A DNA stretch of 64,000 nucleotides, from contig NW_026862663.1 of the NCBI RefSeq assembly GCF_026571515.1, positions 310,001 through 374,000 on the forward strand, read 5' to 3'. The stretch's first letter is position 1; the number at the start of each line of letters is the position of its first letter. The DNA comes from Ruditapes philippinarum. Taxonomy: Eukaryota. The position numbers and the translations under genes were made by a program. Below the pieces are notes generated by a model. It was not told the origin of the DNA and made no database searches. It saw only the letters and a list, made by a program, of their open reading frames with translations. This document shows positions 36,183 through 61,336 of the stretch, piece by piece.

Positions 36183-37964
36183 ATGGGTGTGGAATTTGCA
36201 GATTTAGAGCGTTTCATTTTTGACGATTGCAATGAAGATGCAAGTTTGAGTGGTGAAAGCTTTGATACGGATGAGCCTAATGGAAACAACGTTAAGCATT
36301 CGCTTAAAAGCAAAATTCTTGAGAGGCGCGAGAACCTTGGATTGGGCAAGATAACAGTAGATTTTTCTCCGAAACAAAATTACCCGGTACACAATCTATA
36401 TCGTTAATTATGTAGTGACTGGATTTTATTTATTTTCTAGAAAAAAAACAACAACAACACAAAACAACAATAAACATAAATAAAATAAAACGTTATAAAT
36501 GGAAGTAGTGTGGTCAAATAAAGAACAGTTATGTGTTCAAGCTGTTCCTTCGAGCAAAATTTGTACATGCTTAACAAAATATTTTTATATGTACTGTTGT
36601 GAAAATATATATGTTAGAGGTATTTTTTGTATTTCATTTCCAAAGTACATAATAAATCCACGCGGTCATCACTATTTCAAATGTACTTTCTCACAAATAG
36701 TTGACACTAAATAGTTGAACAATGGCAATAAATGAATATTGATAAGGATAAATGAATATTGATAAGATCTTCCATGTTTTTAAAAGATTAGTAATCGTTA
36801 CATCTATCTATGACAAAATAATAATGTTTGTTTTGTTTTATTTATTTCAGTTGACAGAGATAGAAAAAGAAAAGGATAGGAAAAGAAAAGAGAGTAACAG
36901 AATTTCAGCAAAAAAATGTCGAGAAAAACAGAAGGAAGATCACAAAAGAAACAAAATGGTAAACACATTGGAAGAGAACAATATGTGTGTGAGTGCGTGC
37001 GTGCGTGCGTGTGGTGTGAAAATGTGCATGAAATCTTTTACAGTTGTTAACACGTCTCTGCATTTTCTGAGATAGCTATAGCATAACGAGTAATATTCTT
37101 GATAAAAGTAACGTTAACAGGGTACGCTTCTTGTTACACGATATATTATACAATTAACATAAAAAGTAGTTGCTTTACGCAAATCTATTTGATGTGTAAA
37201 CATCAATAATGGAAATGAAAAAAACAAAACGTTAATATGTTAACACATAAAAAATTTACATTTGTGTGAGATTGGCCATCGATTTTTATCAAGAATGGAT
37301 TTGAAATGGTAGTTTCATGGTGGGTTTATAAGACCATTACCTCTCAGTTGGTTATAAAGGTTTTGTCTGATCTATTTTATTGTATAACATATCAACTTTA
37401 TTTATTTTCATTAATGGCCGGATTTGGTAGCTACAGATCATGATTGGGATTTAAAAAAATCTTTATGCCATTGTTAAAGATACATGTGAAATAAAAAATA
37501 TGCAATATGTATATTTATTGAGATGATAATACAGACTTAAGCAATGTTATTTTTTATAGTTACTGGAACAACTAAGGGAAGACCAGCAGAAGTTGTTGAG
37601 CAGGGTGCAACAAATTGAAGAGGAGAAAAATAAAGTTATGTTTGCATTGAAAAAGATATTACCTGATTCCTATATTCTAGAAACTTTAAATCAAACTAAC
37701 TATCATGAACTTCGTGAAAACGCTGTTGCTAAAGACAATTTAGAAACCATTAGAACTATAGAACAGACACAATTAATACAAAATGAAGAGCAAGATTTAT
37801 TGCATATTACAAATGAACAAAACATGCATGAGGATGAACATCTAGGAAGTGAAACCTTGTTTTCGTGTCTTATTGGTGACCAAGGGGATGAGGTACAAAC
37901 AGTTGACCAGTTGGTTAATTTTGAGATAGGAAATGATATTTTACTGTCTATATTCACGCAATGA
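36183..37964 (+). CDS. Fos/ATF3-type bZIP transcription factor, cluster gene A1, 238 aa; exons 36183-36386, 36851-36958, 37560-37964
   Basis: GT-AG phase-0 introns give a continuous frame. The 108-nt exon encodes LTEIEKEKDRKRKESNRISAKKCREKQKEDHKRNKM (N-x7-R), followed by zipper LREDQQKLLSRVQQIEEEKNKV. Colinear with gene A2. Confidence 0.88.
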
Positions 37965-39279
37965 TAGGCAATGTTAATGACATTGGAACTAATGTGTAGG
38001 TTTTCACAATGACTCAGTATTTTATGCTAGAATCAAAATTTAACCAGTACATTCAAGTCTCATTTTAAAACATATCATTTCTTTTAAAATAATTAATGAA
38101 AATTAACCAACAACCAACAACAACAACAACAAACACACAAAAAATATTACTAACTTTATGTAATAAATAACTAGTCATGTTCTACCTTACATAAACTATT
38201 TACTTGGTAACATCTTGGGAAAATATGTTTATATTTGATAAGCCAAACAAATTTATGGAATAGTCATATGTTTTAATTTGTTGCATAATTATTTATCAAT
38301 TTGTAAATTAATAAAACATATTAATATGTATTTGGTTTTTGTTGTCATACATGTATTCATTTATTCAGGTTGTTAAAAGATATAGATGCTCTATTTATCT
38401 GAAGAGTAAGTGATTTTTTTTCCACACTGTTGTGTTCATTTAAATAAATGCAGATACTATATTTGATCAGTTTTGTTGGTATACCACGTGTTAGTGTCGT
38501 CCGCTTTGAGTCAATATTATGTACATTTTGTATTTGAATTATTATTTGGATATTGAGAACATTATCGACAACTATGTAACTATATTGTATTGCATTTTCA
38601 ATAGTATACATAGGAAACGTTCCGATATCTGTCCCTCGCAAAATTGTGTACGTAAATATAAAAATGTGAACAGTAGAGTTGAAGTCCTATTACTTTTGCC
38701 CCCAGTCCCCACTGGACTTTGACTTGCATGTGAAACCCCTCTAAAATATAAATATCAACTTCCGTTTTAAGTGAAAATCTATGTTACCAACCTGATAAGA
38801 ATAGATAGTTAATTCAGTCTTGTTGAATGTGGGGGATTATTTCGAATTTAGAATTAGTATGCCCGTCAAAATGTGTAGATGATTACTGCAAGAAAAATTG
38901 CCAACATACTATTTTTATTTTTTAAAAAGGGGTTCAAATTTAATAAAAAGATATTTTCTTTTTGTAAATTCACAGATAACTGACGAAAAATGGAATTGCA
39001 CGGTTTATAAAATAATTAAGAAGTAGACTCTTATGACATCTTTATTTTAAATGGAATCTTCGGTCAATAGTACTTTTTCAGTACATATCACATAATGGAG
39101 CTGAAAGAAGCATAGACTCCAGATTTTCGAACCCATTTAGTCACTTGTTACTGTCAGACAGGAATAAACGATGACTGCCTTAATCATTAAAGACAGCCCT
39201 TCATTTACAATGGGCATATCACATCATAATAACATCATATTCACCAGCTGAATGTACATTCCATTCCATTCAAGGACGG

Positions 39280-39415
39280 TGCTGGCCACTTTCATTATGA
39301 TCGATCGTGAAATCCTTTCAGGGGTCATTCCCATTGTATTTCTGCTCTGGCATGTACTTGCAAAACTGAAAGCAATTAGTACTGGTTAACTGACCAAGAA
39401 CGATGCAGTGGCTAA
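39280..39415 (+). mobile_element. Possible decayed mollusc SINE central domain
   Basis: gatcgtgaaatcctttcaggggtcattccc ... tagtactggttaac resembles mollusc SINE central domains as I recall them; not verified. Confidence 0.3.
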
Positions 39416-41708: not shown

Positions 41709-41945
41709 TGAGTCGCACTATGACAAAACTAACATAGTGCGTTTGCGACCAGCATGGATCCAGACCAGCCTGCGCATCCGCGCAGTCTGGTTAGGACCCA
41801 TGCTGTTCGCTATCAGTTTCTCTACTTGTTACAGGGTTTGTAAGCGGACAGCATGGATCCTGATCAGACTGCGCGGAAGCGCAGGCTGGTCTGGATCCAT
41901 GCTGGTCGCAAACGCACTATGTTGGTTTTGTCATGACGCGGCTCA
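41709..41945. mobile_element. ~237-bp hairpin MITE with ~100-bp inverted arms
   Basis: aacatagtgcgtttgcgaccagcatggatccagaccagcctgcgc is the inverse of gcgcaggctggtctggatccatgctggtcgcaaacgcactatgtt; a second copy lies at 1-75. Confidence 0.9.
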
Positions 41946-44124
41946 TTTATCAGCAGAGAATGCCACAAGATCATCGGATTTTATGCACCCTGGAATAATT
42001 TTTACCGTTTCCTACAGGTACCCGAAACGGGTTTCCAATGTGGTATGGTCATTGTGGAGATGTTCACGCAATGTGGTCACTTCCCGCAGGCAAGGTCTAC
42101 TAGATGGTTGACGTTGTCGATGAACATCAAAAAGATTCGCCTGCCTGTATATACATGTATCATAAAGCTATCCAGCTTCAATATATATGTATCTTTATGT
42201 ATTCTTATAAAGAATGGGCTGTTCATCAAATTTAGTTCTTTTCTGTACGAAATCTGCTGTGGTCATAGTATTATTTTTACAATAGGTTTATCTCTTAGAT
42301 TTGGTTTTCTATTGCTAATCATGGTCATGCAACTACATAGTTAGGTGAAGAAGCAGACGCTTGTTTTGGTTGAGTCTATTATGTTTTGTTTAGGGGGTGA
42401 GTTGTCATACACAAATTTACAATTTATATGCATTTATTTTTCCAATGATTGTTATTATCTTAAATGCTTCTGGGATTGTTGTTTTATCAATTCATTTGTA
42501 AATAAGATTGTTATATGTCTAGTAACGGAATAATTTTAATGAACACGAAATTAGTTCACACCTACATGTGTATTGCATGGTAACGTGATGGTTTAAGCCA
42601 ATGAAAACACGTCAATATTATTATACTCAGGCAGAGAAAAAGTGTGCAAAGAGTAAATCGATAATCTTTATGTAGCAAGCAAACTTTAAATTGTAAGTAT
42701 TTTTTCATATCTTTTCGGCAGGATAAACTGTCCGAGGAGGGCCAGGCATTTTCGTATCGTAAAATGGCTGCCATTTACAGTATCAAGTGATTATCCCAAG
42801 CACCACCGCGACTTAGCGCGGGAATTTTAATTATAGCTAACCTCGGCGCGTCTCATAGGATGGAAAATACCTTTTTCATATTTTATTGTAATAAATATTT
42901 ACAAACTGTGTCTTTCGGGTTTTTTTTATCAATATATAACCAATAATGATGTTAATATGAATAAATAATCATATCTCAAATCTGTGACTATGATTTACAA
43001 TGAAATTCTACCTTAAGTGTATTAAAAAGGTTTTTAATTTCCTGTTATTTTATTTTGTGATTATGCTTAAAAACAGTCAATTGACCGTGAATTTTCTTTT
43101 CATATTTTGATTTTCTTGAAATCATTTTTCTCATCTGAAGGCATGCGACTTTAATATGATGATACATTAATTACATTTCATGAAAATGTTTAAAGATATT
43201 TAATATCTCATGACATGTTTGTTCATTTTGCATTACACCTTTAATTCAGCAAACATAAAGTCTTCACAAAAAGTAGTATGCAATCGTACCTACGAGTATA
43301 TTACATACGAATGTATGTAATATTTTTCTTGTTATAACTGAAAAAAGTTCGTGGACTTTTATAATACATGTATGTTATTGACCACTGTATAAACCTATAC
43401 TCCATTTCATTGAAATAAAAACAACTTTAACTACTCAACTGTTGAACTAAAAAAAATTTGGGAGAATAAAATTTGAATCGTTTCAGAAGCGTGAATTATG
43501 TTATACAAATAAAAGGACATCTTTTTATCACCCTAAAGTGTCGTTATGTTTACAGTAGCAATCTAAAAATAGCTTAAAAAATCGATTTTTGGAGCACCAT
43601 TGTTATCATGCATTTTTTTCTTTATTACTAAATTAATCCAAATGTGTTTGTGTCTAAATGACGGCAATAATATGGATAAAGAAATTGCTATGAATATACA
43701 TGTATTGATATTATAAGTGCATTCGGTTTGAGAACAATTTTAAACAAAGCGTTCGTTTTCAAAGATCTCTAGTATAATAACATTACTTCATGTACCATCT
43801 GTACTTTTTTTTAATATTGGAATCCCGCCCAATTAAAAAAAACACAATCTAAATATAGATGGGAAATACCTTACAAAAATAGAAATTTATCTATTTTTAA
43901 AAGCGGAAAATCCACTGTATTATAGAGTGTATCTATTTATAAATAGACACACGCATAGTCCGTATTATATTCGTTTAAATTTTTGGAAAGGAAACATTAT
44001 CTGATTATTACAAGTGTCGATCGGTATTCTTCCATAAAATCAATGGATATTTCAGCTAGGTCGAGGTTTTAACGTGTCTGTATATACTTTGAGTATTACT
44101 TGGATTATTTCACGATTTCCCGCA

Positions 44125-44136
44125 TGCGCATGCGCA
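44125..44136. promoter_or_regulatory. Perfect NRF-1-type palindrome TGCGCATGCGCA ~130 bp upstream of the A2 ATG
   Basis: Exact match to YGCGCAYGCGCR in AT-rich DNA; TATA-like tatatagata at ~44179. Confidence 0.5.
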
Positions 44137-44267
44137 AAAGTGATAATTTTAAGCGCGAAACCGGCAATGTAAAAAACGTATATAGATAGACCGCAAGACC
44201 ATCATCGTCGGATTTGGATTCATAAAGCAACCCCTTAAGAACCGCTTTTAGAAATATTTCATGTAAG

Positions 44268-46230
44268 ATGGGTGTTGAATTACAAAATAATTTCGTTGAT
44301 GGATTTTATTGTTGGGATAATAACTCGAATTCTAAATGTCAAACAAATGAGAGTGGAAACGGCTATAGTACATTAATCAGTAAAAACAAAATTGTAAAAC
44401 AGTGCTTGAAGACAAAGGTCATTGGAAGTTTAAAAAGTCGTGGGCTTGACCATGTTGCCGCAGATTTTAGCCCCAAGCAAAATTATCCGGTTAGTTTAAT
44501 GCTTTGCTTGTTTTGTGTGTGTGTGTTTTTTTTGTTTTTGTTTGCTAGGGGTTTTTGTGGGGGTGTTGTTTATTTTGAAGGGGGTGTTTGTTGCTTTTTT
44601 TTCTCTTTTTTTTGCTACATGTACATATATATTATTCACTACCGCGTCAAAAATTTAAAATTACATAAAGAATTACTAGCTATACTTGTACATTTTTGTA
44701 CCTCAAATTCCTGAAAAAATATAACAATAGTGTTCAAAAGAGAACAATAAAATCAAAATGATTTTTGTATTTACTCAAAGCAAGTTTTTATAGGCCCATC
44801 CTGCTTCAGAAATACTTTTATTTCTCAAAAGCTTTCTATTTTTGGTATACTTTTATAGTTTCATCGGCAAAATACCTGAACCGCCTTTTGCCTCAGTTAG
44901 TACAGTTATAGTGATTTAGTATTTTGTGTGGTAGTCAAAATACTACTTTGATTATATTTTGCTACTTTTATGGCATATTATTTCACATTTTAAATATAGC
45001 TAGTTTTTTAAGGTTACAGTCATCTAACATGCTCTAAAACTATTATTTTAACGTTATGAATTCATCTTTGCCTTTTCAGAAGGAGTAAAATTATTTGTTT
45101 TGAAGCATAATGTGCCTTTTAAGATACCGACCCGAACACTAGTTTGAATCATTCTTTTATTGCATTAGAAAACACGAGTTTCTCTTAATTTTGAATAAAA
45201 TAAGTACTCCTTTATACGTGTATCTATTTTCTTTAAGGGTAAGTTTTTGTTGTTTTTTATTATTATAATTTCAACCGGATTTACATAGTTTAAATTTTAT
45301 TTTCAGATGACGAAAGAAGAAATCGAGAAAGATAGAAGAAGGAGACAAAGTAACAGGGACTCGGCCAGGAAATGTAGGGAGAAACAGAAAGCTGAGGACA
45401 ATGAAAATATGAAGGTCTTTAATGTTTTATGTGATAAATAATAATAATAATGACAATAATAATAATAATGATAATAATAATAATAATAATTATACTAATA
45501 ATAATAATAATTAATAGTAATATGATGATGATGATGATGATTGTTTTTATTTTAGAATGTTCTGTATAACATTGTCACTGAATGTTCGCACACGGCAAAA
45601 ATAATGTTGAATATTTTTTTATCTATTTATTTGTTTGTTCNNNNNNNNNNNNNNNNNNNNNNNNNNNNNNNNNNNNNNNNNNNNNNNNNNNNNNNNNNNN
45701 NNNNNNNNNNNNNNNNNNNNNNNNNNNNNNNNNNNNNNNNNNNNNNNNNNNNNNNNNNNNNNNNNNNNNNNNNNNNNNNNNNNNNNNTATCGCTGCTGAA
45801 AATGCAAAAAGAGAAACTTTTAGAAGTTGTCAGCAAATCCGAAGAGGAAAAGAATAGATTATTGTATAACCTAAAATTAGTGTTACCAGACTCCTATATC
45901 ACGGAAGCTTTAAGAAAAGTAGAGAATGTGACAGCTGAAAAAGATCGCATATTAGCTGATCAATCTTCTAACTGTGCGGTGACAGTTCCAATAGATAGCC
46001 CTAATTTTTCTGAATGCTTCGTCTTGGAAGAAAACAGTTCTATTGAAAGTTTTGTATTGACTTCCTTTGATAATTCCACGGGTGAAGAAGAAATCATGGA
46101 CGGTTCTGTTGAATATTTAGAAGTTACTAACGAAGAGACGGTACCAGTCATTGATATAAATTATGATGAAAATTCAACAGTAAATACAATTATATTTGAA
46201 GACCCAGGCGTCAGTCATACATTGCTGTGA
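44268..46230 (+). CDS. Fos/ATF3-type bZIP transcription factor, cluster gene A2, ~258 aa; exons 44268-44489, 45307-45414, ~45784(in gap)-46230
   Basis: Same tgtaagATGggtgt start and DFSPKQNYP exon end as A1. 108-nt exon MTKEEIEKDRRRRQSNRDSARKCREKQKAEDNENMK; zipper LKMQKEKLLEVVSKSEEEKNRL followed by LPDSYI. The exon 3 acceptor is hidden in the N gap (~4 nt missing by alignment to A1). Confidence 0.85.
45438..45541. repeat. (AAT)n/(GAT)n microsatellite in A2 intron 2
   Basis: Read directly. Confidence 0.9.
45641..45787. other. Assembly gap covering the A2 exon 3 splice acceptor
   Basis: N run ends within the inferred second codon of exon 3. Confidence 1.
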
Positions 46231-49464: not shown

Positions 49465-50255
49465 CTAAATATGTTCCAATTGTAATGAGCTCTCGAGGGC
49501 AATATAAACATGTATAGATATGTTTCAGTGGTAATGAGCTCTCGAGGGCAATATAAACATGTATACATATGTTTCAGTGGTAATGAGCTCTCGAGGGCAA
49601 TATGAACATGTTCTAGTGGTAAAGAAGAAGATATCTCCGTTAGCATGCATAAATATGTTCCAGTGGTAATGAGCTCTCGAGGGCGATATGAACATGTTCT
49701 AGTGGTAAAGAGGAAGATATCTCCATTAGCATGTATAGATATGTTTCAGGTGTAATGAGCTCTCGGGAGCAATGTAAACATTTTCTAGTGGTAAAGAAGA
49801 AGATATCTCCATTAGCATGTATAGATATGTTTCAGAGGTAATGAGGTCTCGAGAGCAATATAAACATGTTCTAGTGGTAAAGAGGAGGATATCTTCATTA
49901 GCATGAATAGATATGTTTCAGAGGTAATGAGCTCTCGGGAGCAATATAAACATGTTCTAGTGGTAAAGAGGAAGATATCTCCATTAGCATGTATAGATAT
50001 GTTTCAGAGGTAATGAGCTCTCGGGAGCAATATAAACATGTTCTAGTGGTAAAGAGGAAGATATCTCCATTAGTATGTATAGATATGTTTCAGAGGTAAT
50101 GAGCTCTCGAGGGCAATATGAGAATGTTCTAAGGAATCTCGTTAGCATGCATAGATATGTTTCAGTGGTAATGATCTCTGGAGGGTTATATAAGAATGTT
50201 CTAGTAGTATAGAGGTAGGAACTTTCGTTAACATGTATAGATATGTTTCAGTGAT
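49465..50255. repeat. 86-bp tandem array (~7 copies) preceded by shorter 49-bp variants
   Basis: ggtaatgag(c/g)tctcg recurs at 49530, 49579, 49665, 49837, 49923, 50009, 50095, with a variant copy at ~49751. Confidence 0.9.
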
Positions 50256-51596
50256 GCTTTAATCTGCGTTGGGATTGTATTATATTTCAGTTGGATGTAT
50301 AAGCATATTTCTGTGACACATGACACCATGTAAAAATTTTACAATATTAGGATCCTTTTTTGCAAAAACCTTTTGCTGACCATTACAAAACCGATGAAAC
50401 TTTATTTTTAGGAACACATTTTTAAGGAATTGATAGTTTGACATGAATGTCGTCTAAAGTTGGCTTGTTTACATTTTAAATTCGAAATCTGCTTTTGAAA
50501 ACGAAACTTACAAAATACATTTACCAATTTAATTGTCATGATATTATCGATTATGTAAATGCTAACTGTTACAATTTGCTAATTTACGTTGCTATTGTAC
50601 TTATTGGTTTACAATTTCGATTGTTTACAATCAAATCTGGCTTGCTCTAAATTTCATCTTGTATGCTGTTTACAAAACCCGATGTGTATATCATAATTTC
50701 ATTTGGCTGAATTAAAGTACAATATAGTTTGGTGATATATTTCAACATGTCGGGACTGTATACATTGTATAAACATTGATATTTCAATATTGCTCTGTCA
50801 CAATGCTACCAGACCTCAACACACGTTGTCATCACACAATAGGAAATATGTAATCAGCCACAAAGCAAAATGAAAGTAAGCATAATGTCAAATGCAAAAA
50901 GATTGTCACATTTTCATACAAATGGATGCATGTTCGTTTGTTTTCAAAATGTAACGGACATCCCTGTTTGCAAATATCTCAACGGTACAGAATAGGGCAG
51001 CCAAGTTTTATTCAAGTATTGGTAGGTATAATTAAAATGCTGCAGTTTGCGGTGATACACATATTTGATAGTATATTTGTTGGAAATCTGTGTTAGCAAT
51101 TTGGTGTAGACTTACCAATATGGATCAATCAAGATTAATTAAGAAAATCTTTATTTTTGACAAATTGATTGTCAAGAAAAATAAGTAAAAATGAAATAAT
51201 AAAGTATGCCATGAGTTTAAACAATATCATTGCAGGGTTCTTATTACTGGAGCTCAGTTTTTGAAAGTTGATATATTTAGTACCATACTACCTATAATTA
51301 TAGTAGATTATATATAAGGTTAACCGCGAAACAGCACAGGATGGGTTAGGATGTGATTAAGCCTGTTCATGGATGATCATTGAAAGAGCAAGCTACCGTC
51401 CACACCCCTTAGCATCGGCTTTAGCAGAATTCAAATTGAATAATCGTTTGTCTCTGAGCAATATTGTAAATAAAATAGAAGAAAAACAGCACTTTATTAT
51501 TCACCAATTAGCTCACAAAACTGTTTGTTTTCTCTTTTTCAGTTTTCATAGTTATCCAGCAATATTTGAGTTTACTACTGTAATACAGCTCAATGT

Positions 51597-53872
51597 ATGA
51601 GAAAAAACAGTGTACCTTCTCAAAAGATCGACAAGAGACGAGAAGCAAGGGCAACCAGTTTTTCTAGCCATGTTACTGTACATAACAAATCAAAGCCAAA
51701 TCAAAGTTTATCTTCACCAGCAACTCCAGTACATTCCCAATATTCAATCACGTCGAGTTCAAACATTTTAACACCAAGTGAAACAGCATATTTTACCAGT
51801 TCTCTAAATGAAGGATATGGGAACGTCGAAGAAGTTTCTGAAAACTTTTCTTTTGACACAAACGTTCTTAATGAAAATGACGAAGAAGAAATTTTTATAG
51901 CAACCCCTTTAGAACTGGGTTATTTTCCTGCTTCTGATGCAAATGATAAAGAATTTGATTTTGATTCATCTAAAACCTGTTTTTCAACATTTGATTCAAT
52001 AGAAACATATACTTCTCCTTTTCATTCCACGCTTTCTAGTAACTCTGACAGTGACTCAGATACAGAGGATAAATTTGTGTTATTTTCTGATACTTCATCC
52101 GACGAAGAATACTTTTCCGTAACTTCACCAAAGTATTATGATATAAAACCATTACCATCCGGAAACTTGCCCAACTTTGACGAACTTGAACCAGTTAATA
52201 AGGACAAAGAATTGTTTAAGCCTCCGGTAAATCCGCTAGTTTCTAAAAGAACACCAACAGCAACAACAACTTATTCGTCAGAATCAAATGTAGAAGAATT
52301 ATCATATATCTTTGACAAATCGCATTCTTCAGTTAAAGACGGTCATAAGAAAGAGAAACGTGAAACATCAATAGCAGCAGACGAAAAGAAGACTGCAACA
52401 TTTTGTTCAACAAATATTCAGACAGCATTGTTAAGTAAAATAACACCAGATAGAAAAAGTAAGAAATTATACCACAGTCCTTTCGACGACTTTCTTAATA
52501 TGCAATTACAAAGGAAAACTCTACATACAGAAGAACCTGGGTCTAAATCAGGACATGACAGAGATATAGAAGTGGACCTTGAAAACTTTGAGACTGAAGT
52601 TGGCAAAGCGTTTGAAGAGTCAGTGAGTGAAGGATCGTTAATGCCATTACTAAAACAGGAACTTCAATGTAAAATACAGGTCAGACGTTTATCAATGGGA
52701 CAATCTGAGTTAGTGCTTGAACCTGAAGAGCCAAAGGTATATAAAGTAAGTACAAAGGGAACTTTTAAGAACAACATCCAACTTGAAAGAGAAAGAAAAA
52801 ATACGAATTTTAAAGTGGATTACTTTTCACTGAATCTGGATTTATATCATGTTTCAGTTATTATAGCAATTGAATATTTTTGAAAACAGTGCCTGTATTA
52901 TTTATAAATAATTTAAGAGTGGTTGAAGTAATTTAAATGCATTCAATCAACTAGAATAATAATTATATTTTCCGCATTTCACTAACATTAGAAAACTCTT
53001 GCTATATATATTATATTGGAAATGGTACTGATACTGATGGCAATTCTTTCTTTTTAGATGCAGACGCTTAGTAAAATAAATTGAGACTTCATCTCATGAC
53101 AATTTGTAGGTAGTAAAACAAATATATGAGTCATTTTTCATCAATGCTTTTAGTTTGTTTGTGCAAATTTATCATTCGATAACTCGAAAAAACAAACTTG
53201 TTGTAAATTTTGTTATTTAAATTTTTCTTATTAAATGATATTAATAAAAATTATATTCTTATTCATTATAGCTTACAGAAGATGAAATAAAAAAGAAACA
53301 GGCACGCCTAGAACAGAACCGTAGATCGGCAAAGAAATCGAGACACAAAGCAAGAAAACATGAACAGAATCTTTTAAATGTAAGTTTTTTATTATAAACA
53401 GTTCCACAACATTTGATAACATTCTTCTTTTAGTTTAAACATTATTTATTTAAGCTTTATCATGAAAAAATATTTGGACTACTCCTTAGTGTATAACCTG
53501 GAAAAGCCAGCTTTGGTAACATATAAAGAAATATGTACATGTATGTCATTCAGGTGCTTTTATATAAGGATACATTAAATTGAAATGACAGATAATTGAG
53601 TACATTTAATTTTAATTAAAGTAATATTTTTTCTTAGCTAACACGTATGTTGATTTTTAGAATTCTTCTACTGCAATGGACATGTTAACATATTAAATAT
53701 ACAAATGTTCTGTTTTTAGCACATCAAAAAGGCAATGACAAAAAATACAAAACTGCGAAAAGAAATTTCAAAACTGCAGACGATAAGAGACAAGTATAAA
53801 AAGACGTTTGATCTTCACATGGTGTCCTGTACAGCAACAAGTTCTTCAACAAGTTCTTCAACGCCACCATAG
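51597..53872 (+). CDS. ATF3/Fos-type bZIP transcription factor, cluster gene B1, 469 aa; exons 51597-52745, 53272-53379, 53720-53872
   Basis: Long Ser/acidic exon ending PLLKQELQCKIQVRRLSMG...VYK|gtaagt (ATF3-like KEELRxxI motif). 108-nt exon LTEDEIKKKQARLEQNRRSAKKSRHKARKHEQNLLN. Zipper ends FDLHMVSC, the Fos/ATF3 H-x3-C motif. A candidate acceptor at 51541-51542 suggests an upstream UTR exon. Confidence 0.9.
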
Positions 53873-54514
53873 CCGAGTGTCAGATTATCATAGCTTCAGC
53901 TGGCTGAAAGCTTTAGCATAGAGAAAGTCTTGATGGGCATTACTTAAATACGCGCGATTAATCCAGCAGTTTTTAAAGATATGTATAGTACCCAAATTAC
54001 AGACAGGTATTTTACATTGGACCGTCTGTTGATATACTGCGTACAATGTATGAGTTTTACATGCACACATGAACACTTTAAACATGTCACAATTGTTTAA
54101 CGGTGCAAATGCAACTTGGATGAAACATGTTTAAATGTCTACATGTAGGTATTAAGTATTATTTTTCTAAAGAAGTTGGCAAAACGAAACATCAGTAATG
54201 TGTACAATTGATTCCTCAGAACGATGAACAGATGATGTATATATCCCTTTTCATATTTGAATTAGTAAATATAAGAATCAGTTTCCAAATATCTTATACA
54301 TTTTATCGCTTTCATATTTTAATTCATAGATTGTAACAGTAATTCTTACGTACTACTCGTACAGATATTAACTAAAATACTTCGACAATTTTTTACTGGT
54401 CATAATTAACTTTGCTCTGTTTATTAGAATTATATATACATAAAATACTTTATTAAGAAATAACCTGAATATTCACCCGATTGTAATTCATACTCGTATA
54501 ACCTCAGCTTTATT

Positions 54515-54779
54515 TTAGCCGCGAACTGGTTTGTTAATATTTATTCATATTGTTGTCACATTGTCTTTTTATCTAATAATTCAAATACCTTTTATATGTA
54601 ACTACAATGCATACTTTTATGGGTTTTTTTGTATTATTATGGAACTTGTTAGCCGCGAACTGGTTTGTTAATATTTATTCATATTGTTGTCACATTGTCT
54701 TTTTATCTAATAATTCATATACCTTTTATATGTAACTACAATGCATACTTTTATGGGTTTTTTGTATTATTATGGAACT
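54515..54779. repeat. Recent tandem duplication (period 134 bp) downstream of B1
   Basis: ttagccgcgaactggtttgttaat...tatggaact at 54515 and 54649, nearly identical. Confidence 0.9.
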
Positions 54780-54985
54780 GACGTGTATGAATTTTTAATT
54801 ACATTTATCAAAAGTAATTGTTTCTGAAATACCAAACCCTTTAAGACATTACTAGCAAAAACAATAAAAGTAATTGTAAACAGGTTTTCTTTTACCTTCA
54901 ACTTCTTGATGGAGTAAGTGCTCTTTGACATTATCGGGAAATTTAGTATTTTTGGAAACGAAATAAATGTAAGGAATTCAATTGA

Positions 54986-55275
54986 AAATCCGAAGAGAAA
55001 AAGTATAGACTATTGTATAATCTAAAACTAGTGTTACCAGACACATATATCACGGAAGCTTTGAGAACAGTAAAGATGACAACTGAAAAGGTACAACTAT
55101 AAGCTGATCAACCTTTTTATTGTGCGGTGATAGTTTTAATAGATAGCCCTATTTTTCTGAAAGCTTCCCGTCTTGGAAGAAAAACAGTACTTGTGAAAGT
55201 TTTGTATTGACCTCTCTTGATAATTTCAAGGGCGATGAATAAACCATGAACGTTTCTGTTGAATATTTAGAAGTT
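54986..55275 (+). pseudogene. Pseudogenised copy of A2 exon 3
   Basis: Colinear with 45835-46126 (KSEEKKYRLLYNLKLVLPDTYITEALR...SVEYLEV), with an in-frame TAA at 55100-55102 and several indels. Confidence 0.88.
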
Positions 55276-56930
55276 TAAAGTCAACTTAAAGTTAAAATCC
55301 TTTCATTCACATCAGGTCATGGCAAATGTAAGTATTGTGTAGTATGGTAAATATGTATACAATGTCGTTTTCTGTGAAATCTCCAATATTTTAAACCTTA
55401 CGTTAATTACTATAAATGCATACACAATTGTTTTAACATAGGTTGTGTTTCACCAATGAACAAAAAATGAAATACTAGTACATTATCAATAATTTTAAAC
55501 ATTTTTTATATAAATTCAAATTATATAGTTGCATTAGTTCCTAGTTTCCTAAATATATAAATCTTTGCGTATATGAAGTTTTTCATACATCTACTGTCAA
55601 ATGTTCTCCACGATGTCGTACTGTAAATTCGATTTTTTTTGCGAAGACAATTTGTGATTATTATCTATGATAACCTCGGAAACAATACGGATTGAAAGTA
55701 GTTCTACCAATTGGTTTCAGATGTAAACAGAAAAACGAATGTATATAAAGAAAAGTAATGTCTGTTTCGGTCACTTATGATTGAAAATATGTCTGGCAAC
55801 AATTTTTAATTTAAATAAACCCACTGATGTTCAATTTTAAACAAATCCGACTAAATGCCAAGAGGTTGGTTTTTTGTACTTTCGGTTTCTACAACCATAA
55901 TAAAAATATAGAAATAATGTATTGTTTGCTTTTGTATCTATGAATTCATTTATTTTAGGTAGACTTTTACTACATATATAGGAAATAAACTTGTCAACAA
56001 CTCCCAGCATTAATTTACTATTTGTTTACATGTTTTGTTTCTAAGCGTATGTTAGACCGAAATACCGCATCCGTTCCTTGTATTCATACTATTGTGTTCG
56101 AGGTCCTTATCCGAAGACTGACGGAAATGGCCGAAAAGTTGCGATTGGATTTTGCAATGTCTGCACGTGCTTTGAAATATGTTATATTCCTGGGGAAGAG
56201 ACGGTGTCAGTCATTGCTATAAATTACATACAAAGACCGAGGGGTCAGTTAAACGTTACTTTGATAAAGATATTATTTATCTAAACAATTCTCCAGAAAA
56301 AGACCACTTCTTGGTAAACTGATCTGCTTTATATGATTGTGTAATAAAACATTTTAAATGTAAACAAACAGCAATTCATGTATCTTGTACAGTTTATAGA
56401 TTTTTTTTTGCAAAAGCAAGATCAAGTGCCAAATTTTACTTGTTTAATGGGTGTAAGAAGTGTGAATGCATTCGAGAATTAGCATCCGGTTTCCTGAAAA
56501 CTGTACTATTTCACCGACACAGATTCTGTTATTAGATGAATGTGCATTTTAATTTATTTAAACCACAAATGTTAAAAGTATTCATAATAATAGTAATAAT
56601 TATGATCAACAAAACGAAAGATAAATAATGAATAATTATTATGAATTATGAGATTGATAATAATAAATTAATAACCTTACAACAACATGATTTTGACAGA
56701 ATAATTCACACTCTCTGGTTGATTTAGATCGAGGGCCTTCACCATTACAAAGTCTATGTACCCTTATTTATCAGGTCGTTATAATACAAAGAATCTTATA
56801 CAAAAAAATAATATAAATGTAGTATATATGAAAATGTTGTTTTTTTTTATTCCATGAATTACATCACCAGCTTTATGTTTCCAAAAAATAATATATATCA
56901 ATATGTTTGGTCATATATCTAACTTCCTAA

Positions 56931-57164
56931 TTGGCGACGCCGGTGAGCGGCGTCGTCTCTTATGGAATGCTTTTTATTTTGGCCTATGGAAGGAGCTGTT
57001 ATTATTAGCAGTTAATGTCATGTTGTGTTAATTAGTTTTATTTTGATTCGTAAAAATCGAGTAAACAAATATGTTGTTATATTTGTATTTAATAACTTTA
57101 AGTAAAAAGCATGTGCATTGTGATATTATTTTCACGAAATTGCAGGCTCAGTTTAACAGCTTGT
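56931..57164 (-). repeat. Inverted copy of the 25952-26190 dispersed repeat
   Basis: Near-identical reverse complement. Confidence 0.9.
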
Positions 57165-58898
57165 ATATTCTTCTTATACTTTTAATTTATATATATAGTT
57201 GTATATGCTATATTTAGAATTAGGAAACCAAAAAAAATTTAATTTGTATACAAGTATGTCTTTCTGAAAACAAATACAGCGATATATATATATAACTACA
57301 GGGAAACCATGTCAGGTGATGATGTATTTCGAAATGCTAGTAGACATAATGCATTTCGTGGAGTTTTATATAAAAAAAGTTAAAGGTACGTGACTAATTA
57401 TTGACTATTATTCTACGCATATCCGGATGCAAAATATTGTTGTACATTAATTTTTATATAAAAATGATTTATCAGGCAAACAGAGCTTCATTTTAAGGTA
57501 ATTTATTATTATAAAAAAAGTTAATTTGTAGAAAGAAATATTGTTTCACGTTTCACCTTTATTGAGCATGGAAGCAATAATATAGCATCGTATGATATAA
57601 AATGGCCGAAAGAAAAACAAACAAAAATGTTTCTTGCATAAAAACATGAAATATGTTTCCTAATTACGTTTATCATTTGTTTTGCCAAAATACGGACATT
57701 ATAAAGTGACGATCGATAGCTTTATGATCATTTATAATTTATTTAACAAACTATCATATGAAATGACAACTTGTAAACCAATATACGCAGATTTCTTACT
57801 AATAAATCAAAATGGCTGATTTCAATGCTGGTATGGAATAAGTCAATATCTTAAAAATATTAGAATGGCTTTAAGAAAAATGATATAAAAACAGTAACAA
57901 GTAACATGGTAGATAAAGCTATTGATAAAACTCTCTAGATAAACAAAGAAGAAAATAAATATCAAGAGGGGTTATCCCATCAGAAGTAATGACATTAAAA
58001 TCATACAAAAAATAAAGAATTGCTTTGATCAAGTCTGTTATTGAGAAAAATATAAAAGTGCAACATCTTTCCGGAAAGTAGGAGAATCAAGCAGTATTCC
58101 GTCTTCTACAATTAATAATCCCGAAGGACCCGTAGAAAAACTGACGCAGAGTGTAATAATTGTATAAATAACCTGAAATTTTGCATAAACCTCAGTACAA
58201 TTATGCCAGGCCGTCATAATCTTTTTATATACAATACTTTGTTTGTTTTTCGGGAGTAATGATTCGTTTAAAGCATGTTAGACCTCAGAAATGATTTTGT
58301 TCTTTCTGTACAATATGCAGACATGTGTTTTAAAAGTTTGATAAAGTTACAATAATGTATCTAAAACAGTTAAGAGGCTTATCACCTTATCAAAATACCC
58401 CTAAATGTGACATTTGTCATAAAGGCAACAAAAAATAAACAAATTGGTCATTCGAGCTTCATACAATATGGCTACTGAGTAACTTTTAAGAAGCTGTAAA
58501 AGGTGTAAACGACACCAACAATAAACCGTTTTTGACAAAAAAAAAACATATTAGCATTTTAAAGCTAAATGGGACTTGAATAAAGGAAAAACAAAAAGGA
58601 AATAATATGACCTCAACAGCAATCTGATTCATTATTGTTCAGATGTGGAATTCTATTAATGACATTTCATATATACATGTAATTCATAATTGTGCTATTT
58701 GGGAAATTGAAGACTCAAGTTTAGCTAATAGAAATATATGTGACTAAGGTTTGAGGCATTTATTTATTTTCGTTGCATGGTTTCTCTTAAGCCAGCTTTA
58801 AAGTCTGAAATGAATTATAGTATTTTAATTTTATATCTATATTTTCTTTTTCATTTTTACATACTTGACCAACAATTGGATATTACACCATACAATTA

Positions 58899-61336
58899 AT
58901 GAGAACAGCCAGCGAAAGCAGAAACCTAAAATACCACAACAAGAAGCAGAGAGGAGAGGCAGAGAAAGCCAATTCGTATCACAGAACACATCCAAATTAT
59001 GAAAATAGTTCCACATCAAGACCAGCTCCAATATATCCCCAATATTCAATCACGGCGAGTTCACATATTTTAGAACCAAGTGAGAGAGCGTATTATACAT
59101 GTCCTCTAGATGAAGGATATGGAAATCTAGAAGAAGTTTCTGAAAACTATTTTGACACAAACGTTCTTATTGAAAATGAAGAAGAAGAAGAAGAAGAAGA
59201 AGAAGAAGAAGAAGAAATTCTTATTGCAACTCCTCTTGAATTGAATTATTTCGAGGTTCGTGACAATAATAGCAATGTCTTTAATTCTTCTTCACCTAAA
59301 TCTTCTACTACAAAATCAGATTATATAGATACATATCATTTTAGTGATTCTGACAGTGACTCGGATACAGAGGAGTTATTTGACTTATTTTCTGACTCTT
59401 CATACGACGAAGGATACTCTTCCCTAATTTCACCTATTTCATACGATTTTAAACTATCGCCAGGCGGAAATTTGCCCAACTTCGAGGAAATTGTACCAGT
59501 TAAGAAAGATAATAAGTTGCTTAAACCTCCGGTAAATCCGCTAGTTTCTAAAAGAGCCCCAACAGCAACATCAACTTATTCGTCAGAATCAAATAATAAA
59601 GAATCATCATTTATTTTTGACAAATCCCATTCTTCAGTTACAGATAAAGACGACCATAAAAAAGAGAAAAGTGAGAAGTCAGTAACGGCCTATGGAAAAA
59701 AGACTGAAACATTTTGTTCAACAAATATTCAGACAGCATTATTAAGTAAAATAACACCAGATAGAAAAAGGAAAAAAATACAAATCAGTCCTTTTTACGA
59801 CTTTCTTAATATGCAATTACAAAGGAAAACTCTACATACGGAAGTACCTGGGTCTAAATCAGGACATGACAGAGATATAGAAGTGGACCTTGAAAACTTT
59901 GAGACTGAAGTTGGTAAAGCGTTTGAAGAGTCAGTGAGTGAAGGATCTTTAATGCCATTACTAAAACAGGAACTTCAATGTAAAATACAGGTCAGACGTT
60001 TATCAATGGGACAACCTGAGTTAGTGATTGAACCTGAAGAGCCGAGGACATATAAAGTAAGTAAAGAGAAAACACTGCTGTGAACAACAAAAACATTGAA
60101 TACGTCGTAGAAATCAGTGAATTTCATCAAAGTGCATTACATTCTACTGAAACTGGCTCTTTATATGCTCTTTCAGACATTGCATGGATACTTTGTGTGT
60201 TTTAAGTATAGATTATTTAAGATTTGTTCAAGAAGAATAACGTATTCAAAAGTTTCTAATTCTTCATTCCAATAACATTTGAAATATTTTGTTAAAACGT
60301 TACGATAGTATGTTTGGCAATTATTTTGTATTTTGTTGTAAGTGTTAGTGGTAATTCATTTTTAATGGAGAGGGAGACGTTGTGGTAAATAAAAATTATA
60401 TGAAGTTAATCAAATTTAAAAGTATTCTTTTTTCGTTTTCGTTCTTATCCGCAGTTACATTTTATTAGCAATTGTATAATTGCTGCTTGTACGGCGGTTT
60501 TGAACTTTGATTGTGCAAAAGTTTTGATGTTAAAGTCGATACAAACAAAATCGTGATTCCTTTAATTTGTTATCAACATTTCTGATAACAACGTGGTTTC
60601 AATTTTTTATAGCTTACAGAAGATGAAATAAGAAAGAAGCAAGCCCGTCTTGAACAAAACCGTAGATCGGCAAAGAAAACTAGACACAAAGCAAGGAAAT
60701 ATGAACAGTATCTTTTAAACGTAAGTTTCATTGAACGCCGCCTTTCCTTGTCGATCTTGTTTATCATATTGTATTGCAAAAATAAACAGTTCTATACTTG
60801 AATATATCCTTCTTTTTTGTTTATTTAAACATAAGCTATTTTAGATCACATGCAGCATATTCAAACCACTCTCGAACGCATTTCCGGAAAATAATCAGCA
60901 ATGGTATCATATGAAGAGACATTGTCGTTAGACTCATGCTTTAAAAAATAATTGACAAATTGTGCACGTGCAATTAAACATGAAAATGGTAAATTAAACA
61001 AGTTGTTTATTCAAACATGTGCCTTCTTATTTGTTCTGTTATATATATTCTAACGATAGACATTGTGTAAAATGTATTTTTTAAATAATTTCTAGTGCAT
61101 ATACTATTTTTAAAATAATGTTTTTGTAATTGATAAGTCTACTGTAAATTGAATTTGCTAACATGTTAACTTATCACATAACATATTTGTGATTTTATCA
61201 GGAAATCTATAAGGAAATGAAAACACACGCAAAGCTGAGGAAAGAAGTTTCAAAATTGCAGTCGTTGAGAGACGAGTATAAAAAGAAATTTGATCTTCAC
61301 ATGATGTCTTGTACAGCAACAAGTTCAAGCAATTAG
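58899..61336 (+). CDS. ATF3/Fos-type bZIP transcription factor, cluster gene B2, 466 aa; exons 58899-60056, 60613-60720, 61202-61336
   Basis: Paralog of B1 with identical splice positions. Basic exon LTEDEIRKKQARLEQNRRSAKKTRHKARKYEQYLLN; last exon EIYKEMKTHAKLRKEVSKLQSLRDEYKKKFDLHMMSCTATSSSN*. AATAAA at ~61565. Confidence 0.9.
59178..59216 (+). repeat. Coding (GAA)13 microsatellite, poly-Glu in B2
   Basis: Read directly; B1 has DEEE at the same position. Confidence 0.95.

What the first reader, a model, noticed from the sequence alone, without database searches (positions are those of the whole stretch)
36183..61336. Tandem cluster of four divergent Fos/ATF3-type bZIP genes in two opposite architectures
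Seen: four same-strand genes within 25 kb, each with a 108-nt phase-0 basic-region exon. Established: human FOS and ATF3 encode the basic region on an equivalent 36-codon exon. Seen: A1/A2 have a ~70-aa N-terminus and a long acidic C-tail, whereas B1/B2 have a ~385-aa Ser/acidic N-terminus and stop just after the zipper. All keep a version of the ATF3-like pre-bZIP motif (VKHSLKSKILERRENLG, VKQCLKTKVIGSLKSRG, LKQELQCKIQVRRLSMG). Inference: a lineage-specific AP-1/ATF3 expansion in which the acidic region sits on opposite sides of the bZIP. This is the best candidate here for an undescribed regulatory system.
Basis: partly seen in the sequence, partly recalled or inferred. Interest (0 to 1): 0.78.

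Follow-up and report, generated by a model that had tools for sequence, protein, structure and literature searches.

The report
Clam Fos/ATF3-like bZIP gene cluster
Four real, spliced and transcribed transcription-factor genes of the leucine-zipper kind lie side by side in a Manila clam genome; they belong to an uncharacterised mollusc branch of the Fos/ATF3 group that has multiplied in bivalves.

Summary
Four same-strand three-exon genes lie at 36183-61336. Each has a 108-nt phase-0 basic-region exon with AG/GT borders: 4 in the window, 0 in 200 shuffles. A1 and B1 are letter for letter the RefSeq proteins 'uncharacterized protein LOC132719783 / LOC132719785 [Ruditapes philippinarum]'. RNA contigs carry both B1 junctions. 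Spliced transcript contigs exist for A1 and an A2-like gene.

The N gap hides the acceptor and about two codons of A2 exon 3. I did not fill it.

A and B share a pre-bZIP helix motif that ends 32 codons before the same intron (hhalign 92%). That signature marks a mollusc-wide family, which NCBI names ATF-3-like, BATF-like or c-Fos-like from gene to gene. The family's profile fits c-Fos/FosB best among solved bZIPs (E 1.5e-12).

The clam holds about 20 such exons. They include a fifth gene just past the window and a decayed A-type exon between B1 and B2.

B-type relatives occur in Mya and Mytilus, so the expansion is only partly lineage-specific. This is a new variant of a known kind, not a new regulatory system. 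Function is inferred, not shown.

The parts
36183..36386 (+). A1 exon 1: start codon, 68 codons. It holds the pre-bZIP motif from 36291 and ends 32 codons after the motif's first residue.
   Evidence: Matches RefSeq P0013 residues 1-68.
36851..36958 (+). A1 exon 2: 108-nt phase-0 basic-region exon. Asn at codon 16, Cys at the DNA-contact position called 19 in PMC1479340.
   Evidence: Pfam bZIP_1 E 1.8e-4 on the exon alone.
37560..37964 (+). A1 exon 3: zipper, a second predicted helix and the acidic tail (net -17), with the stop codon.
   Evidence: 100% identical to P0013 residues 105-238. AlphaFold helices 71-137 and 140-184, tail disordered.
44268..44489 (+). A2 exon 1: 74 codons with a diverged pre-bZIP motif.
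   Evidence: 96% identical to the spliced transcript protein P0020.
45307..45414 (+). A2 exon 2: 108-nt basic-region exon, Cys at position 19.
   Evidence: Pfam bZIP_2 23.4 bits, above the 22.3 cut-off.
45641..45787 (.). Assembly gap (147 N). It hides the end of A2 intron 2, the acceptor and about two codons of exon 3. Not filled.
45790..46230 (+). A2 exon 3, readable part: zipper and acidic tail (146 codons, net -19), with the stop codon.
   Evidence: 85% identical to P0020 residues 113-257.
51541..51596 (+). B1 5' untranslated part of the first coding exon. RNA contigs of two runs carry 91-92 further letters before 51541 that do not lie within 50000-55500, which points to an upstream non-coding exon.
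   Evidence: table 7 (X8 and X1, loose end before 51541).
51597..52745 (+). B1 exon 1: 383 codons, Ser/Thr- and acid-rich N-terminus (net -22). Pre-bZIP motif from 52650.
   Evidence: P0017. Junction 52745>53272 in contigs of 2 runs.
53272..53379 (+). B1 exon 2: 108-nt basic-region exon, Ser at position 19.
   Evidence: Both flanking junctions lie in RNA contigs that hold the whole exon (side = 108).
53720..53872 (+). B1 exon 3: zipper, His-x3-Cys end and a 13-residue Ser/Thr tail, with the stop codon.
   Evidence: Junction 53379>53720 in one contig each of X8 and X1.
54956..55302 (+). Decayed copy of an A2-type exon 3, with in-frame stops and a frameshift. It is 84% identical in DNA to A2 exon 3 over 294 nt and lies under RNA contigs, perhaps as part of a long B1 3' UTR.
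   Evidence: Depth and pieces at 54593-55472.
58899..60056 (+). B2 exon 1: 386 codons (net -26). Pre-bZIP motif from 59961.
   Evidence: 90% identical to RefSeq P0002, the copy on contig C2714.
60613..60720 (+). B2 exon 2: 108-nt basic-region exon, Thr at position 19.
61202..61336 (+). B2 exon 3: zipper and short tail, with the stop codon.
   Evidence: The splice join of P0002 falls at the same residue.

Best explanation
The region holds four functional, transcribed bZIP transcription-factor genes of Ruditapes philippinarum. They belong to one mollusc-wide family within the Fos/ATF3 (AP-1) group.

The family signature has four parts:
- a short amphipathic helix motif ([LIV]K..L(K/Q)..I(Q/L)..RR...G);
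- an intron exactly 32 codons after the motif starts;
- a 36-codon basic-region exon that begins L/M-T-x-x-E and has the invariant Asn at codon 16;
- a five-heptad zipper on the next exon.

History (inferred). The array grew by tandem duplication. An old split gave the A and B types. A later duplication of an A2-B unit gave B1 and B2, and left a decayed A exon between them.

Mechanism (inferred). Each protein dimerises through its zipper and binds TRE/CRE-like half-sites through its basic region.
- The A types keep the family's usual layout, with a short N-terminus and a long acidic, probably activating, C-tail. They keep the redox-sensitive Cys at the DNA-contact position. Their 'a' heptad positions are polar (Gln or Lys at position 45), which suits heterodimers, for instance with the clam's Jun.
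- The B types lost the tail and gained a long Ser/Thr- and acid-rich N-terminus with conserved blocks. They replaced the Cys by Ser or Thr, the kind of residue that phosphorylation switches in BATF and C/EBP. B1 carries Asn at the same 'a' position as the clam's Jun.

Shown: the genes, their splicing and transcription, the family membership and the residue pattern. Inferred: DNA binding, partners, activation and the two control modes.
For: Gene models and chance control. Identity with RefSeq proteins P0013 and P0017.

Transcription:
- Both B1 junctions (52745>53272 and 53379>53720, GT..AG) are in contigs of runs X8 (RNA on record) and X1, while the introns have zero contig depth.
- Contigs of 923-965 nt from Logan assemblies encode the whole 236-238-aa A1 protein.
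- A 1404-nt contig encodes a complete 257-aa A2-like protein.

bZIP domain: Pfam bZIP_2 scores 26.7 bits for A1 and 25.9 for B1, over the 22.3 cut-off.

One family:
- hhalign of A against B gives probability 92.3%, E 5.4e-7, over 77 columns covering motif plus basic region.
- The exon ends 32 codons after the motif start in A1, B1, B2 and in six paralogs elsewhere in the genome.
- Both types have the same nearest ESM Atlas cluster, a mollusc bZIP cluster (scores 0.92 and 0.93).

Fos/ATF3 group:
- The profile of 30 family members hits c-Fos and FosB at E 1.5e-12 (51 bits), without gaps, through to the His after the zipper. The next hits are BACH1 at 1.9e-9, ATF4 at 5.6e-9 and JunD at 7.5e-7.
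- A1 alone hits FosB at E 4.4e-4.
- NCBI names motif-bearing paralogs ATF-3-like: P0038, P0032, P0024, P0034.

Structure: the motif is a predicted helix at residues 36-52, and the bZIP helix at 71-137 has pLDDT 97-98.

Residues: heptad and position-19 residues are, and the clam Jun register is. The meaning of Cys, Ser or Phe at position 19 comes from passages of PMC1479340.

Duplication history:
- dS between B1 and B2 is 0.35.
- The A relic is 84% identical in DNA to A2 exon 3. The window's B exons 1 are 78-81% identical in DNA to the C2714 copies of the other B gene. B1 and B2 were not compared directly at the DNA level.
- In the comparison with contig C2714, exons (92-93%) are better kept than introns (83-86%).
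Against: - No binding, dimerisation or activation data exist for any of these proteins.
- dN/dS on B exon 1 is high (0.58-0.79), so most of the long N-terminus is under weak constraint.
- B-type zippers have odd core residues: Ala or Asp at d41 and Tyr at d62. B1 alone has no solved-structure match below E = 1. The B2-like protein P0002 is below both Pfam cut-offs (15.9 and 13.6 bits).
- Raw-read depth on B1 is low: 59 and 15 reads laid from the parts read of two runs. In X21, 47 of the 59 reads fit only partly.
- The B2 junctions rest on a RefSeq model of the C2714 copy and on one contig with 26 letters on one side (tables 5 and 5c).
- A2 is interrupted by the gap, and its nearest transcript is only 85% identical over exon 3.
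- The tree does not resolve where A attaches. The best tree places it with two gastropod proteins at 70/78 support, and AU tests reject none of five placements. A-B tandem origin is therefore not shown.
- No vertebrate or arthropod Fos, ATF3, JDP2 or BATF sequences were in the tree.
- No CRE or TRE sites stand out near the genes.
Confidence: 0.78

Rival explanations
1. The B genes no longer act as DNA-binding factors. They would be decaying duplicates, or zipper-only partners that hold other bZIPs in inactive dimers, as dominant negatives.
For: - dN/dS on exon 1 is 0.58-0.79.
- Core zipper positions hold Ala or Asp and Tyr.
- P0002 is below the Pfam cut-offs, and B1 has no solved-structure match below E = 1.
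- Passages of PMC1479340 say that mixed Cys/non-Cys dimers tend to be inhibitory.
Against: - The reading frames of 469 and about 465 codons are open in four copies (window and C2714).
- The Asn, Ala and Arg contact residues of the basic region are kept.
- Motif plus bZIP are 91-99% identical among the B copies, while the N-terminus drifts.
- Relatives in Mya and Mytilus keep the same motif and basic region.
- B1 is spliced and transcribed.
Confidence: 0.15
2. A and B are not tandem duplicates of each other. They would be two old mollusc paralogs, each with its own orthologs, that happen to be neighbours. The cluster would then be ancient synteny of the Fos/ATF3 group and not a clam expansion.
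For: - B groups with Mytilus (94/91) and Mya.
- A groups weakly with Lymnaea and Biomphalaria (70/78) and shares its motif variant with them and with the fifth gene.
- Pecten P0031 has an A-like basic region and layout.
Against: - The A+B clade is not rejected (p-AU 0.47).
- A, B, the fifth gene, the C15579 gene and Pecten P0031 share Ser-Ala in place of the Ala-Ala of the other clades.
- The B1/B2 pair and the A relic show that tandem duplication has been at work here.
Confidence: 0.3
3. Part of the apparent copy number is an assembly artefact: the second B1-B2 pair on the 14.3-kb contig C2714 is the other haplotype of this same locus and not a further duplication.
For: - C2714 is colinear with window 51249-62575.
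- dS to the window copy is the same for both genes (0.064 and 0.065).
- The contig holds nothing else.
Against: - Introns are only 83-86% identical, and most intergenic DNA does not align. That is far apart for alleles, although bivalve haplotypes can differ this much (recalled, not tested).
- RefSeq annotates both as separate genes.
Confidence: 0.6

Closest known systems
ATF3 / JDP2 subfamily of bZIP factors (sister of FOS; passages of PMC4736632)
   Same: - Small proteins with a conserved helix-like motif shortly before the basic region.
- Cys at basic-region position 19 in the A types (PMC1479340 passages).
- NCBI names four motif-bearing mollusc relatives ATF-3 or ATF-3-like.
- The basic region sits on its own 36-codon exon (for ATF3, recalled).
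   Different: - The B types carry Ser or Thr at position 19 and a 383-386-aa N-terminus.
- The A types carry a long acidic C-tail.
- The clam has about ten to twelve such genes, not one or two.
- Orthology to vertebrate ATF3 was not tested.
FOS family (c-Fos, FosB)
   Same: - Best match of the family profile among solved structures: E 1.5e-12, ungapped over basic region, five heptads and the following His.
- A1 alone gives E 4.4e-4.
- The A types have Cys at position 19, polar 'a' positions and a long acidic C-terminal region.
   Different: - B1 alone shows no significant match.
I did not test whether FOS proteins carry it.
- No gene with a canonical Fos-type basic region turned up among the own-genome bZIP_1 matches that I read (30 loci of 65 matches). 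The first look scores only the best candidates, so absence is not shown.
BATF family
   Same: - Ser at position 19 as in B1, the fifth gene and the C15579 gene (PMC1479340 passages).
- B ends right after the zipper.
- NCBI names two family members BATF-like.
   Different: BATF proteins are little more than a bZIP domain (recalled), whereas B1 and B2 have a 383-386-aa N-terminus with conserved blocks. The A types have Cys, not Ser.
Clam paralogs of the same family (P0038 'ATF-3-like isoform X2', P0025 'BATF-like 3', P0028, P0033; Ruditapes philippinarum)
   Same: Same motif, same 32-codon spacing to the intron, same 36-codon exon.
   Different: - The A clade sits on a very long stem (2.8 changes per column).
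- The C and D types carry Phe at position 19.
- Only the B types have the long N-terminus.

Membership tests
bZIP superfamily (Pfam bZIP_1 / bZIP_2) | Domain score over the curated cut-off | tested here: met
   bZIP_2 scores 26.7 bits (A1, P0013) and 25.9 bits (B1, P0017) against a cut-off of 22.3. The A2-like P0018 (20.5-21.3) and the B2-like P0002 (15.9 and 13.6) are below cut-off.
bZIP superfamily (Pfam bZIP_1 / bZIP_2) | Basic-region signature Asn-x7-Arg, followed by heptad hydrophobic positions | tested here: met
   All four exons have Asn at codon 16 and Arg at codon 24. The d positions are N,L,L,I,V (A1) and L,A,L,L,Y (B1). A single helix spans residues 71-137 at pLDDT 97-98 in the A1 model.
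FOS/ATF3 group | Closer to Fos-type bZIP domains than to other bZIP families | tested here: met
   Family profile (30 rows): c-Fos and FosB E 1.5e-12, BACH1 1.9e-9, ATF4 5.6e-9, JunD 7.5e-7. This holds for the family and weakly for A1 alone. It does not hold for B1 alone. ATF3, JDP2 and BATF appear under no such name among the solved chains listed (best 60 of 105).
FOS/ATF3 group | Cys at basic-region position 19 (conserved in FOS and ATF3 according to PMC1479340) | tested here: inconclusive
   Met by A1 and A2 (Cys). Not met by B1 (Ser) or B2 (Thr) (paper passages).
FOS/ATF3 group | Basic region on a separate 108-nt phase-0 exon at the same position as in human FOS and ATF3 | not testable with these tools
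   The exon is present in all four genes. The human exon sizes are recalled only. The passages I saw of the ATF3 review give exon names and no sizes. No vertebrate gene structures were on hand.
ATF3 subfamily | Orthology to bilaterian ATF3 in a tree with reference sequences | not tested
   Reference sequences from outside molluscs could not be obtained through the tools. All 21 named hits of the profile search are molluscs. NCBI's own names differ from gene to gene (ATF-3-like, BATF-like, c-Fos-like).
Mollusc motif-plus-bZIP family (defined here) | Pre-bZIP motif, intron 32 codons after its start, 36-codon basic exon | tested here: met
   A1, B1 and B2 match the rule exactly. A2 has a diverged motif at the same place. 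The same holds for paralogs on C2939 (4 copies), C13971 and C15579, with 33 codons on C4581. Spliced proteins of 10 named mollusc genera besides the clam show the motif next to the bZIP.
BATF family | Small bZIP-only protein with Ser at position 19 | tested here: not met
   B1 has the Ser but is 469 aa, and A1 and A2 have Cys. That BATF is bZIP-only is recalled.

The most novel reading that the evidence does not exclude
Bivalves have turned the usually stable FOS-ATF3 pair into a fast-evolving multigene system, and this array shows a division of labour within it. Neighbouring paralogs keep the same DNA-reading helix and the same pre-bZIP helix. They differ in the switch residue at the DNA contact: Cys, sensing redox, in A; Ser or Thr, sensing kinases, in B; and Phe in a third clade elsewhere in the genome. 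They also differ in which side of the dimerisation domain carries the acidic effector region. The array could then be a combinatorial stress and immune immediate-early module peculiar to bivalves, in which A and B types compete for the same partners and sites under different signals.
Probability: 0.25. Interest if true: 0.55.

Novelty: new variant of a known kind. Interest (0 to 1): 0.36.

Why it matters
According to the passages I read of PMC4736632, the metazoan bZIP complement is 'remarkably stable', and FOS-ATF3 is a single pair that arose on the bilaterian stem. That study sampled one mollusc. Here a clam shows about 20 basic-region exons of this type on 11 contigs. At least three sites hold tandem copies: this array, C2939 and C4850. 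Related but unstudied genes occur across bivalves and gastropods.

If the paralogs differ in partners and in the signal that switches their DNA binding, they are candidates for the stress, immune and environmental responses for which bivalves are studied.

Practical gains:
- The report names and delimits genes that RefSeq calls 'uncharacterized'.
- It flags a gene broken by an assembly gap.
- It flags a probable haplotig annotated as two extra genes.
- It flags a pseudo-exon.

Tried and rejected
Led nowhere:
- The basic-exon profile alone does not separate bZIP families. Plant TGA7, ATF2, ATF4 and FosB all fall between E 0.004 and 0.04.
- The fifth gene's zipper exon alone finds no bZIP among solved structures.
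- ESM Atlas look-alikes give only generic bZIP clusters.
- CRE (2 sites, none near the genes; 8 of 100 shuffles reach 2) and TRE (13 sites; 5 of 100 shuffles reach 13, and 7 of the 13 lie at 2642-3286) show nothing at the promoters.
- AU tests of five placements of the A clade reject none.
- Literature. Searches for bivalve or Ruditapes bZIP surveys and for mollusc ATF3 expansion listed no paper that, by its title and abstract start, treats these genes or a bivalve bZIP survey. I opened only PMC4736632 from those lists. Searches for ATF3 exon sizes and for bZIP intron positions gave no exon sizes. The basic-region alignments and family tables of PMC1479340 and PMC4736632 are in supplements that I could not see, and they may bear on the Phe-19 and Lottia statements.

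Considered and rejected:
- B1 and B2 as alleles: they lie on one contig 5 kb apart, with dS 0.35.
- Chance open frames: shuffle control.
- A truncated zipper in B: in the register of the Fos alignment, B has the full five heptads and the His-x3-Cys end.

Rows left out of the tree:
- P0036 (aberrant C-terminus);
- P0003 and P0004 (genomic read-through, no bZIP);
- P0006 and P0014-P0016 (near-copies of A1);
- P0008 and P0019 (fragments);
- P0045-P0060 (short or weak hits).

The joined step was left out. I searched my spliced models exon by exon and never joined exons. Where a full-length protein was needed, I used public proteins that the tools returned (P0013, P0017, P0020 and others).

Full report
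What is there. The window is AT-rich animal DNA, about 31% G+C. Between 36183 and 61336 the + strand carries four genes of three coding exons each, with canonical AG/GT borders and phase-0 introns:
- A1: 36183-36386, 36851-36958, 37560-37964.
- A2: 44268-44489, 45307-45414, then an exon that begins inside the N gap and reads on from 45790 to 46230.
- B1: 51597-52745, 53272-53379, 53720-53872.
- B2: 58899-60056, 60613-60720, 61202-61336.

In every gene the middle exon is 108 nt and encodes a basic region with Asn at codon 16 and Arg at codon 24. A rule that uses no family sequence (AG, 108 open bases, GT, those two residues, at least nine Lys/Arg) picks out exactly these four exons. It picks them from 47 open AG|108|GT stretches on both strands of the window, and finds none in 200 shuffles.

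The gap. The 147 N at 45641-45787 sit at the end of A2 intron 2. Only two letters separate the gap from the first readable codon of exon 3, so the acceptor and about two codons are hidden. Continuity of frame cannot be shown from the window itself. The readable part is open for 146 codons in the frame that aligns with A1 exon 3. Spliced A2-like transcript proteins (P0018, P0020) have an uninterrupted exon 2 to exon 3 join at that place.

Are the genes real? I searched the models exon by exon and did not join them.
- B1 exon 1 and A1 exon 3 led to public proteins. Cluster look-up then gave P0013 ('uncharacterized protein LOC132719783 [Ruditapes philippinarum]', 238 aa) and P0017 ('LOC132719785', 469 aa). 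Their sequences are my A1 and B1 models with the same joins.
- Logan contigs of 923-965 nt encode the entire A1 protein, so they are spliced RNA. A 1404-nt contig encodes a complete 257-aa A2-like protein.
- For B1 I laid two contig sets and two raw-read RNA runs on 50000-55500. The joints 52745>53272 and 53379>53720, both GT..AG, are in contigs of X8 (RNA on record; one contig each) and X1 (two and one). Contig depth in both introns is zero. The contigs carry 91-92 further letters before 51541, which points to an upstream non-coding exon.
- Raw-read depth was low (59 and 15 reads), and most X21 reads fitted only in part.
- B2 has weaker support: the RefSeq model of its copy on another contig (P0002), and one contig that joins B2-like letters to exon 2 with 26 letters on one side.

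What they are.
- Pfam calls A1 and B1 bZIP_2 above the cut-off (26.7 and 25.9 bits against 22.3). The A2-like P0018 and the B2-like P0002 fall below it.
- The A and B families align profile to profile at 92.3% probability (E 5.4e-7) over 77 columns. Those columns run from the pre-bZIP motif through the basic region.
- The first coding exon ends exactly 32 codons after the motif's first residue in A1, B1 and B2. The same is true of paralogs on three other contigs.
- A profile of motif plus basic region was given to the last protein search. It found 44 proteins at E up to 10 among 8000 scored candidates. All 21 that carry an organism name are molluscs: 16 bivalve rows and 5 gastropod rows. That search only reaches proteins that share five-residue words with the query, so nothing follows for other phyla.
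- NCBI's names for these relatives differ from gene to gene: ATF-3 or ATF-3-like (Mactra twice, Haliotis, and the clam's own gene on contig C13971), BATF-like (Mizuhopecten, and the clam genes on C2939), c-Fos-like (Elysia), or uncharacterized.
- A profile of 30 family members, searched against all solved chains, hits c-Fos and FosB first (E 1.5e-12, 51 bits). The alignment is ungapped from the basic region to the His after the fifth heptad. BACH1 (1.9e-9), ATF4 (5.6e-9), JunD (7.5e-7), C/EBP and CREB follow. A1 alone gives FosB at E 4.4e-4. B1 alone gives nothing below E = 1.

Placing the family in the FOS/ATF3 group is therefore supported. Choosing between FOS, ATF3 and BATF is not. That vertebrate ATF3 has a like motif, and that human FOS and ATF3 have an equivalent 36-codon exon, are recollections that I could not check. 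The passages I saw of an ATF3 review name exons A to E without sizes.

How large is the family, and how old?
- The clam genome holds 21 matches to the basic-exon profile, 20 of them at E 0.002 or better. They comprise the four in the window; a fifth on the same contig 10.5 kb past the window's end on the other strand; four in tandem on C2939, with a near-copy on C13057; two on C13971; four of a further type on C4850, C4581 and C5481; and singles on C15579 and C9418.
- The fifth gene (locus L039, minus strand) has a 117-codon first exon with the motif 32 codons before the donor, a 36-codon basic exon with Ser at position 19, and a zipper exon that ends in His-x-Pro-x-Cys before a long tail.
- Contig C2714 (14.3 kb) repeats B1-B2 colinearly. 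Exon 1 is 92-93% identical, introns 83-86%, and dS is 0.064-0.065 for both genes. I read it as the other haplotype (confidence 0.6), although RefSeq lists its genes separately.
- In a tree of 31 proteins over 137 columns, the A clade (A1, the A2-like transcripts and a 311-aa transcript protein) has 100/100 support on a stem of 2.8 changes per column.
- The B clade joins the clam copies (98/96) with Mya (91/64) and Mytilus (94/91).
- The attachment of A is open. The best tree places it with Lymnaea and Biomphalaria at 70/78, and AU tests reject neither A+B (p 0.47) nor four other placements.
- In the whole 5.8-billion-protein collection, the A profile found only four clusters at E 0.01 or better.
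- The A layout (68-74 residues before the basic exon, long acidic tail) is shared by Pecten P0031, Mactra P0035 and the clam's ATF-3-like P0038. It is the family's ordinary form, and the B layout is the derived one.

History of the array.
- B1 and B2 differ by dS 0.35.
- About 1.1 kb after the B1 stop, at 54956-55302, lies a decayed copy of an A2-type exon 3. It has in-frame stops and a frameshift and is 84% identical in DNA to A2 exon 3 over 294 nt. The window's B exons 1 are 78-81% identical in DNA to the C2714 copies of the other B gene; B1 and B2 themselves were not compared at the DNA level.
- The simplest reading, an inference, is that an A2-B unit was duplicated and the second A copy decayed. 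RNA contigs cover the relic, perhaps as part of a long B1 3' UTR.

How it most likely works. The basic regions keep the Asn, Ala and Arg contacts, with Ser-Ala where other clades have Ala-Ala. The AlphaFold model of A1, built on the 30-row family alignment, has these features:
- one helix from residue 71 to 137 at pLDDT 97-98;
- a separate 17-residue helix over the motif (36-52; block mean pLDDT 64-86);
- a further helix at 140-184;
- a disordered acidic tail.

In the Fos register the zipper core positions are N,L,L,I,V in A1 and L,A,L,L,Y in B1. At 'a' position 45, A1 has Gln, the A2-like transcript has Lys and B1 has Asn. The clam's Jun gene also has Asn there. At the contact position called 19 in PMC1479340, A1 and A2 have Cys, B1 has Ser and B2 has Thr.

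The passages I read of that paper state the following:
- Cys-19 is conserved in the FOS, ATF3 and JUN families and mediates redox control.
- Ser-19 in BATF and C/EBP mediates control by phosphorylation.
- Mixed dimers tend to be inhibitory.

I therefore infer that the A types are Fos-like activators that need a partner such as Jun and are redox-sensitive. The B types would be kinase-switched factors or modulators that use an N-terminal effector region with conserved blocks. None of this has been tested. dN/dS of 0.58-0.79 on B exon 1 shows that much of that region is only weakly constrained.

Known or new? The genes are already modelled in RefSeq but unnamed. My searches listed no paper that, by title and abstract start, treats them or a bivalve bZIP survey. 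According to the passages I saw of PMC4736632, FOS-ATF3 arose as a pair on the bilaterian stem and the animal bZIP complement has stayed 'remarkably stable', with Lottia as that study's only mollusc. An expansion to ten or more FOS/ATF3-like genes in a clam is a departure from that picture, but it is an expansion of a known kind of factor. I rate it a new variant of a known kind, of moderate interest.

Noticed in passing
L039:3-2343 (minus strand) = G000:C11150:383045-385385, 9-11.4 kb beyond the window's end: A fifth bZIP gene of the same family faces the array from the other strand. It has a 117-codon first exon with the motif 32 codons before the donor, a 36-codon basic exon (Ser at position 19), and a zipper exon ending in His-x-Pro-x-Cys with a long open tail that runs off the locus.
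   Followed up: partly
window 54956-55302 (+): A decayed A2-type exon 3 (stops and a frameshift, 84% DNA identity to A2 exon 3) lies between B1 and B2 and is covered by RNA contigs.
   Followed up: yes
G000:C2714 (L023 + L024), colinear with window 51249-62575: A second B1-B2 pair sits on a 14.3-kb contig and is annotated in RefSeq as LOC132739478 and LOC132739477. dS to the window copies is 0.064-0.065 for both genes, and introns are 83-86% identical. It is probably the other haplotype.
   Followed up: partly
G000:C2939:97715-126894 (L016-L019), C4850, C4581; proteins P0022-P0034, P0037, P0039, P0041: A well-supported mollusc clade of this family (15 of 31 tree rows, support 96/92) has Phe at the basic-region contact position 19. 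The passages read of PMC1479340 (2006) call Phe-19 restricted to fungi (Yap type). Four such genes stand in tandem on C2939.
   Followed up: partly
window 41722-41950, also G000:C2714:947-1180: A repeat of about 230 nt matches in both orientations. The open frame at 41737-42111 lies in it, so it looks like a dispersed element and not a gene.
   Followed up: no
window 2642-3286: Seven TGAGTCA/TGACTCA sites lie 57-172 nt apart, which suggests a tandem repeat and accounts for most of the apparent excess of AP-1-like sites in the window.
   Followed up: no
G000:C11150:874753-874926 (L047) and G000:C5228:198586-198768 (L042): An ATF4-like bZIP (Tyr at position 19) lies 500 kb further along the same contig. 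A single-exon Jun-like gene, on another contig, is the best bZIP_1 match in the genome.
   Followed up: no
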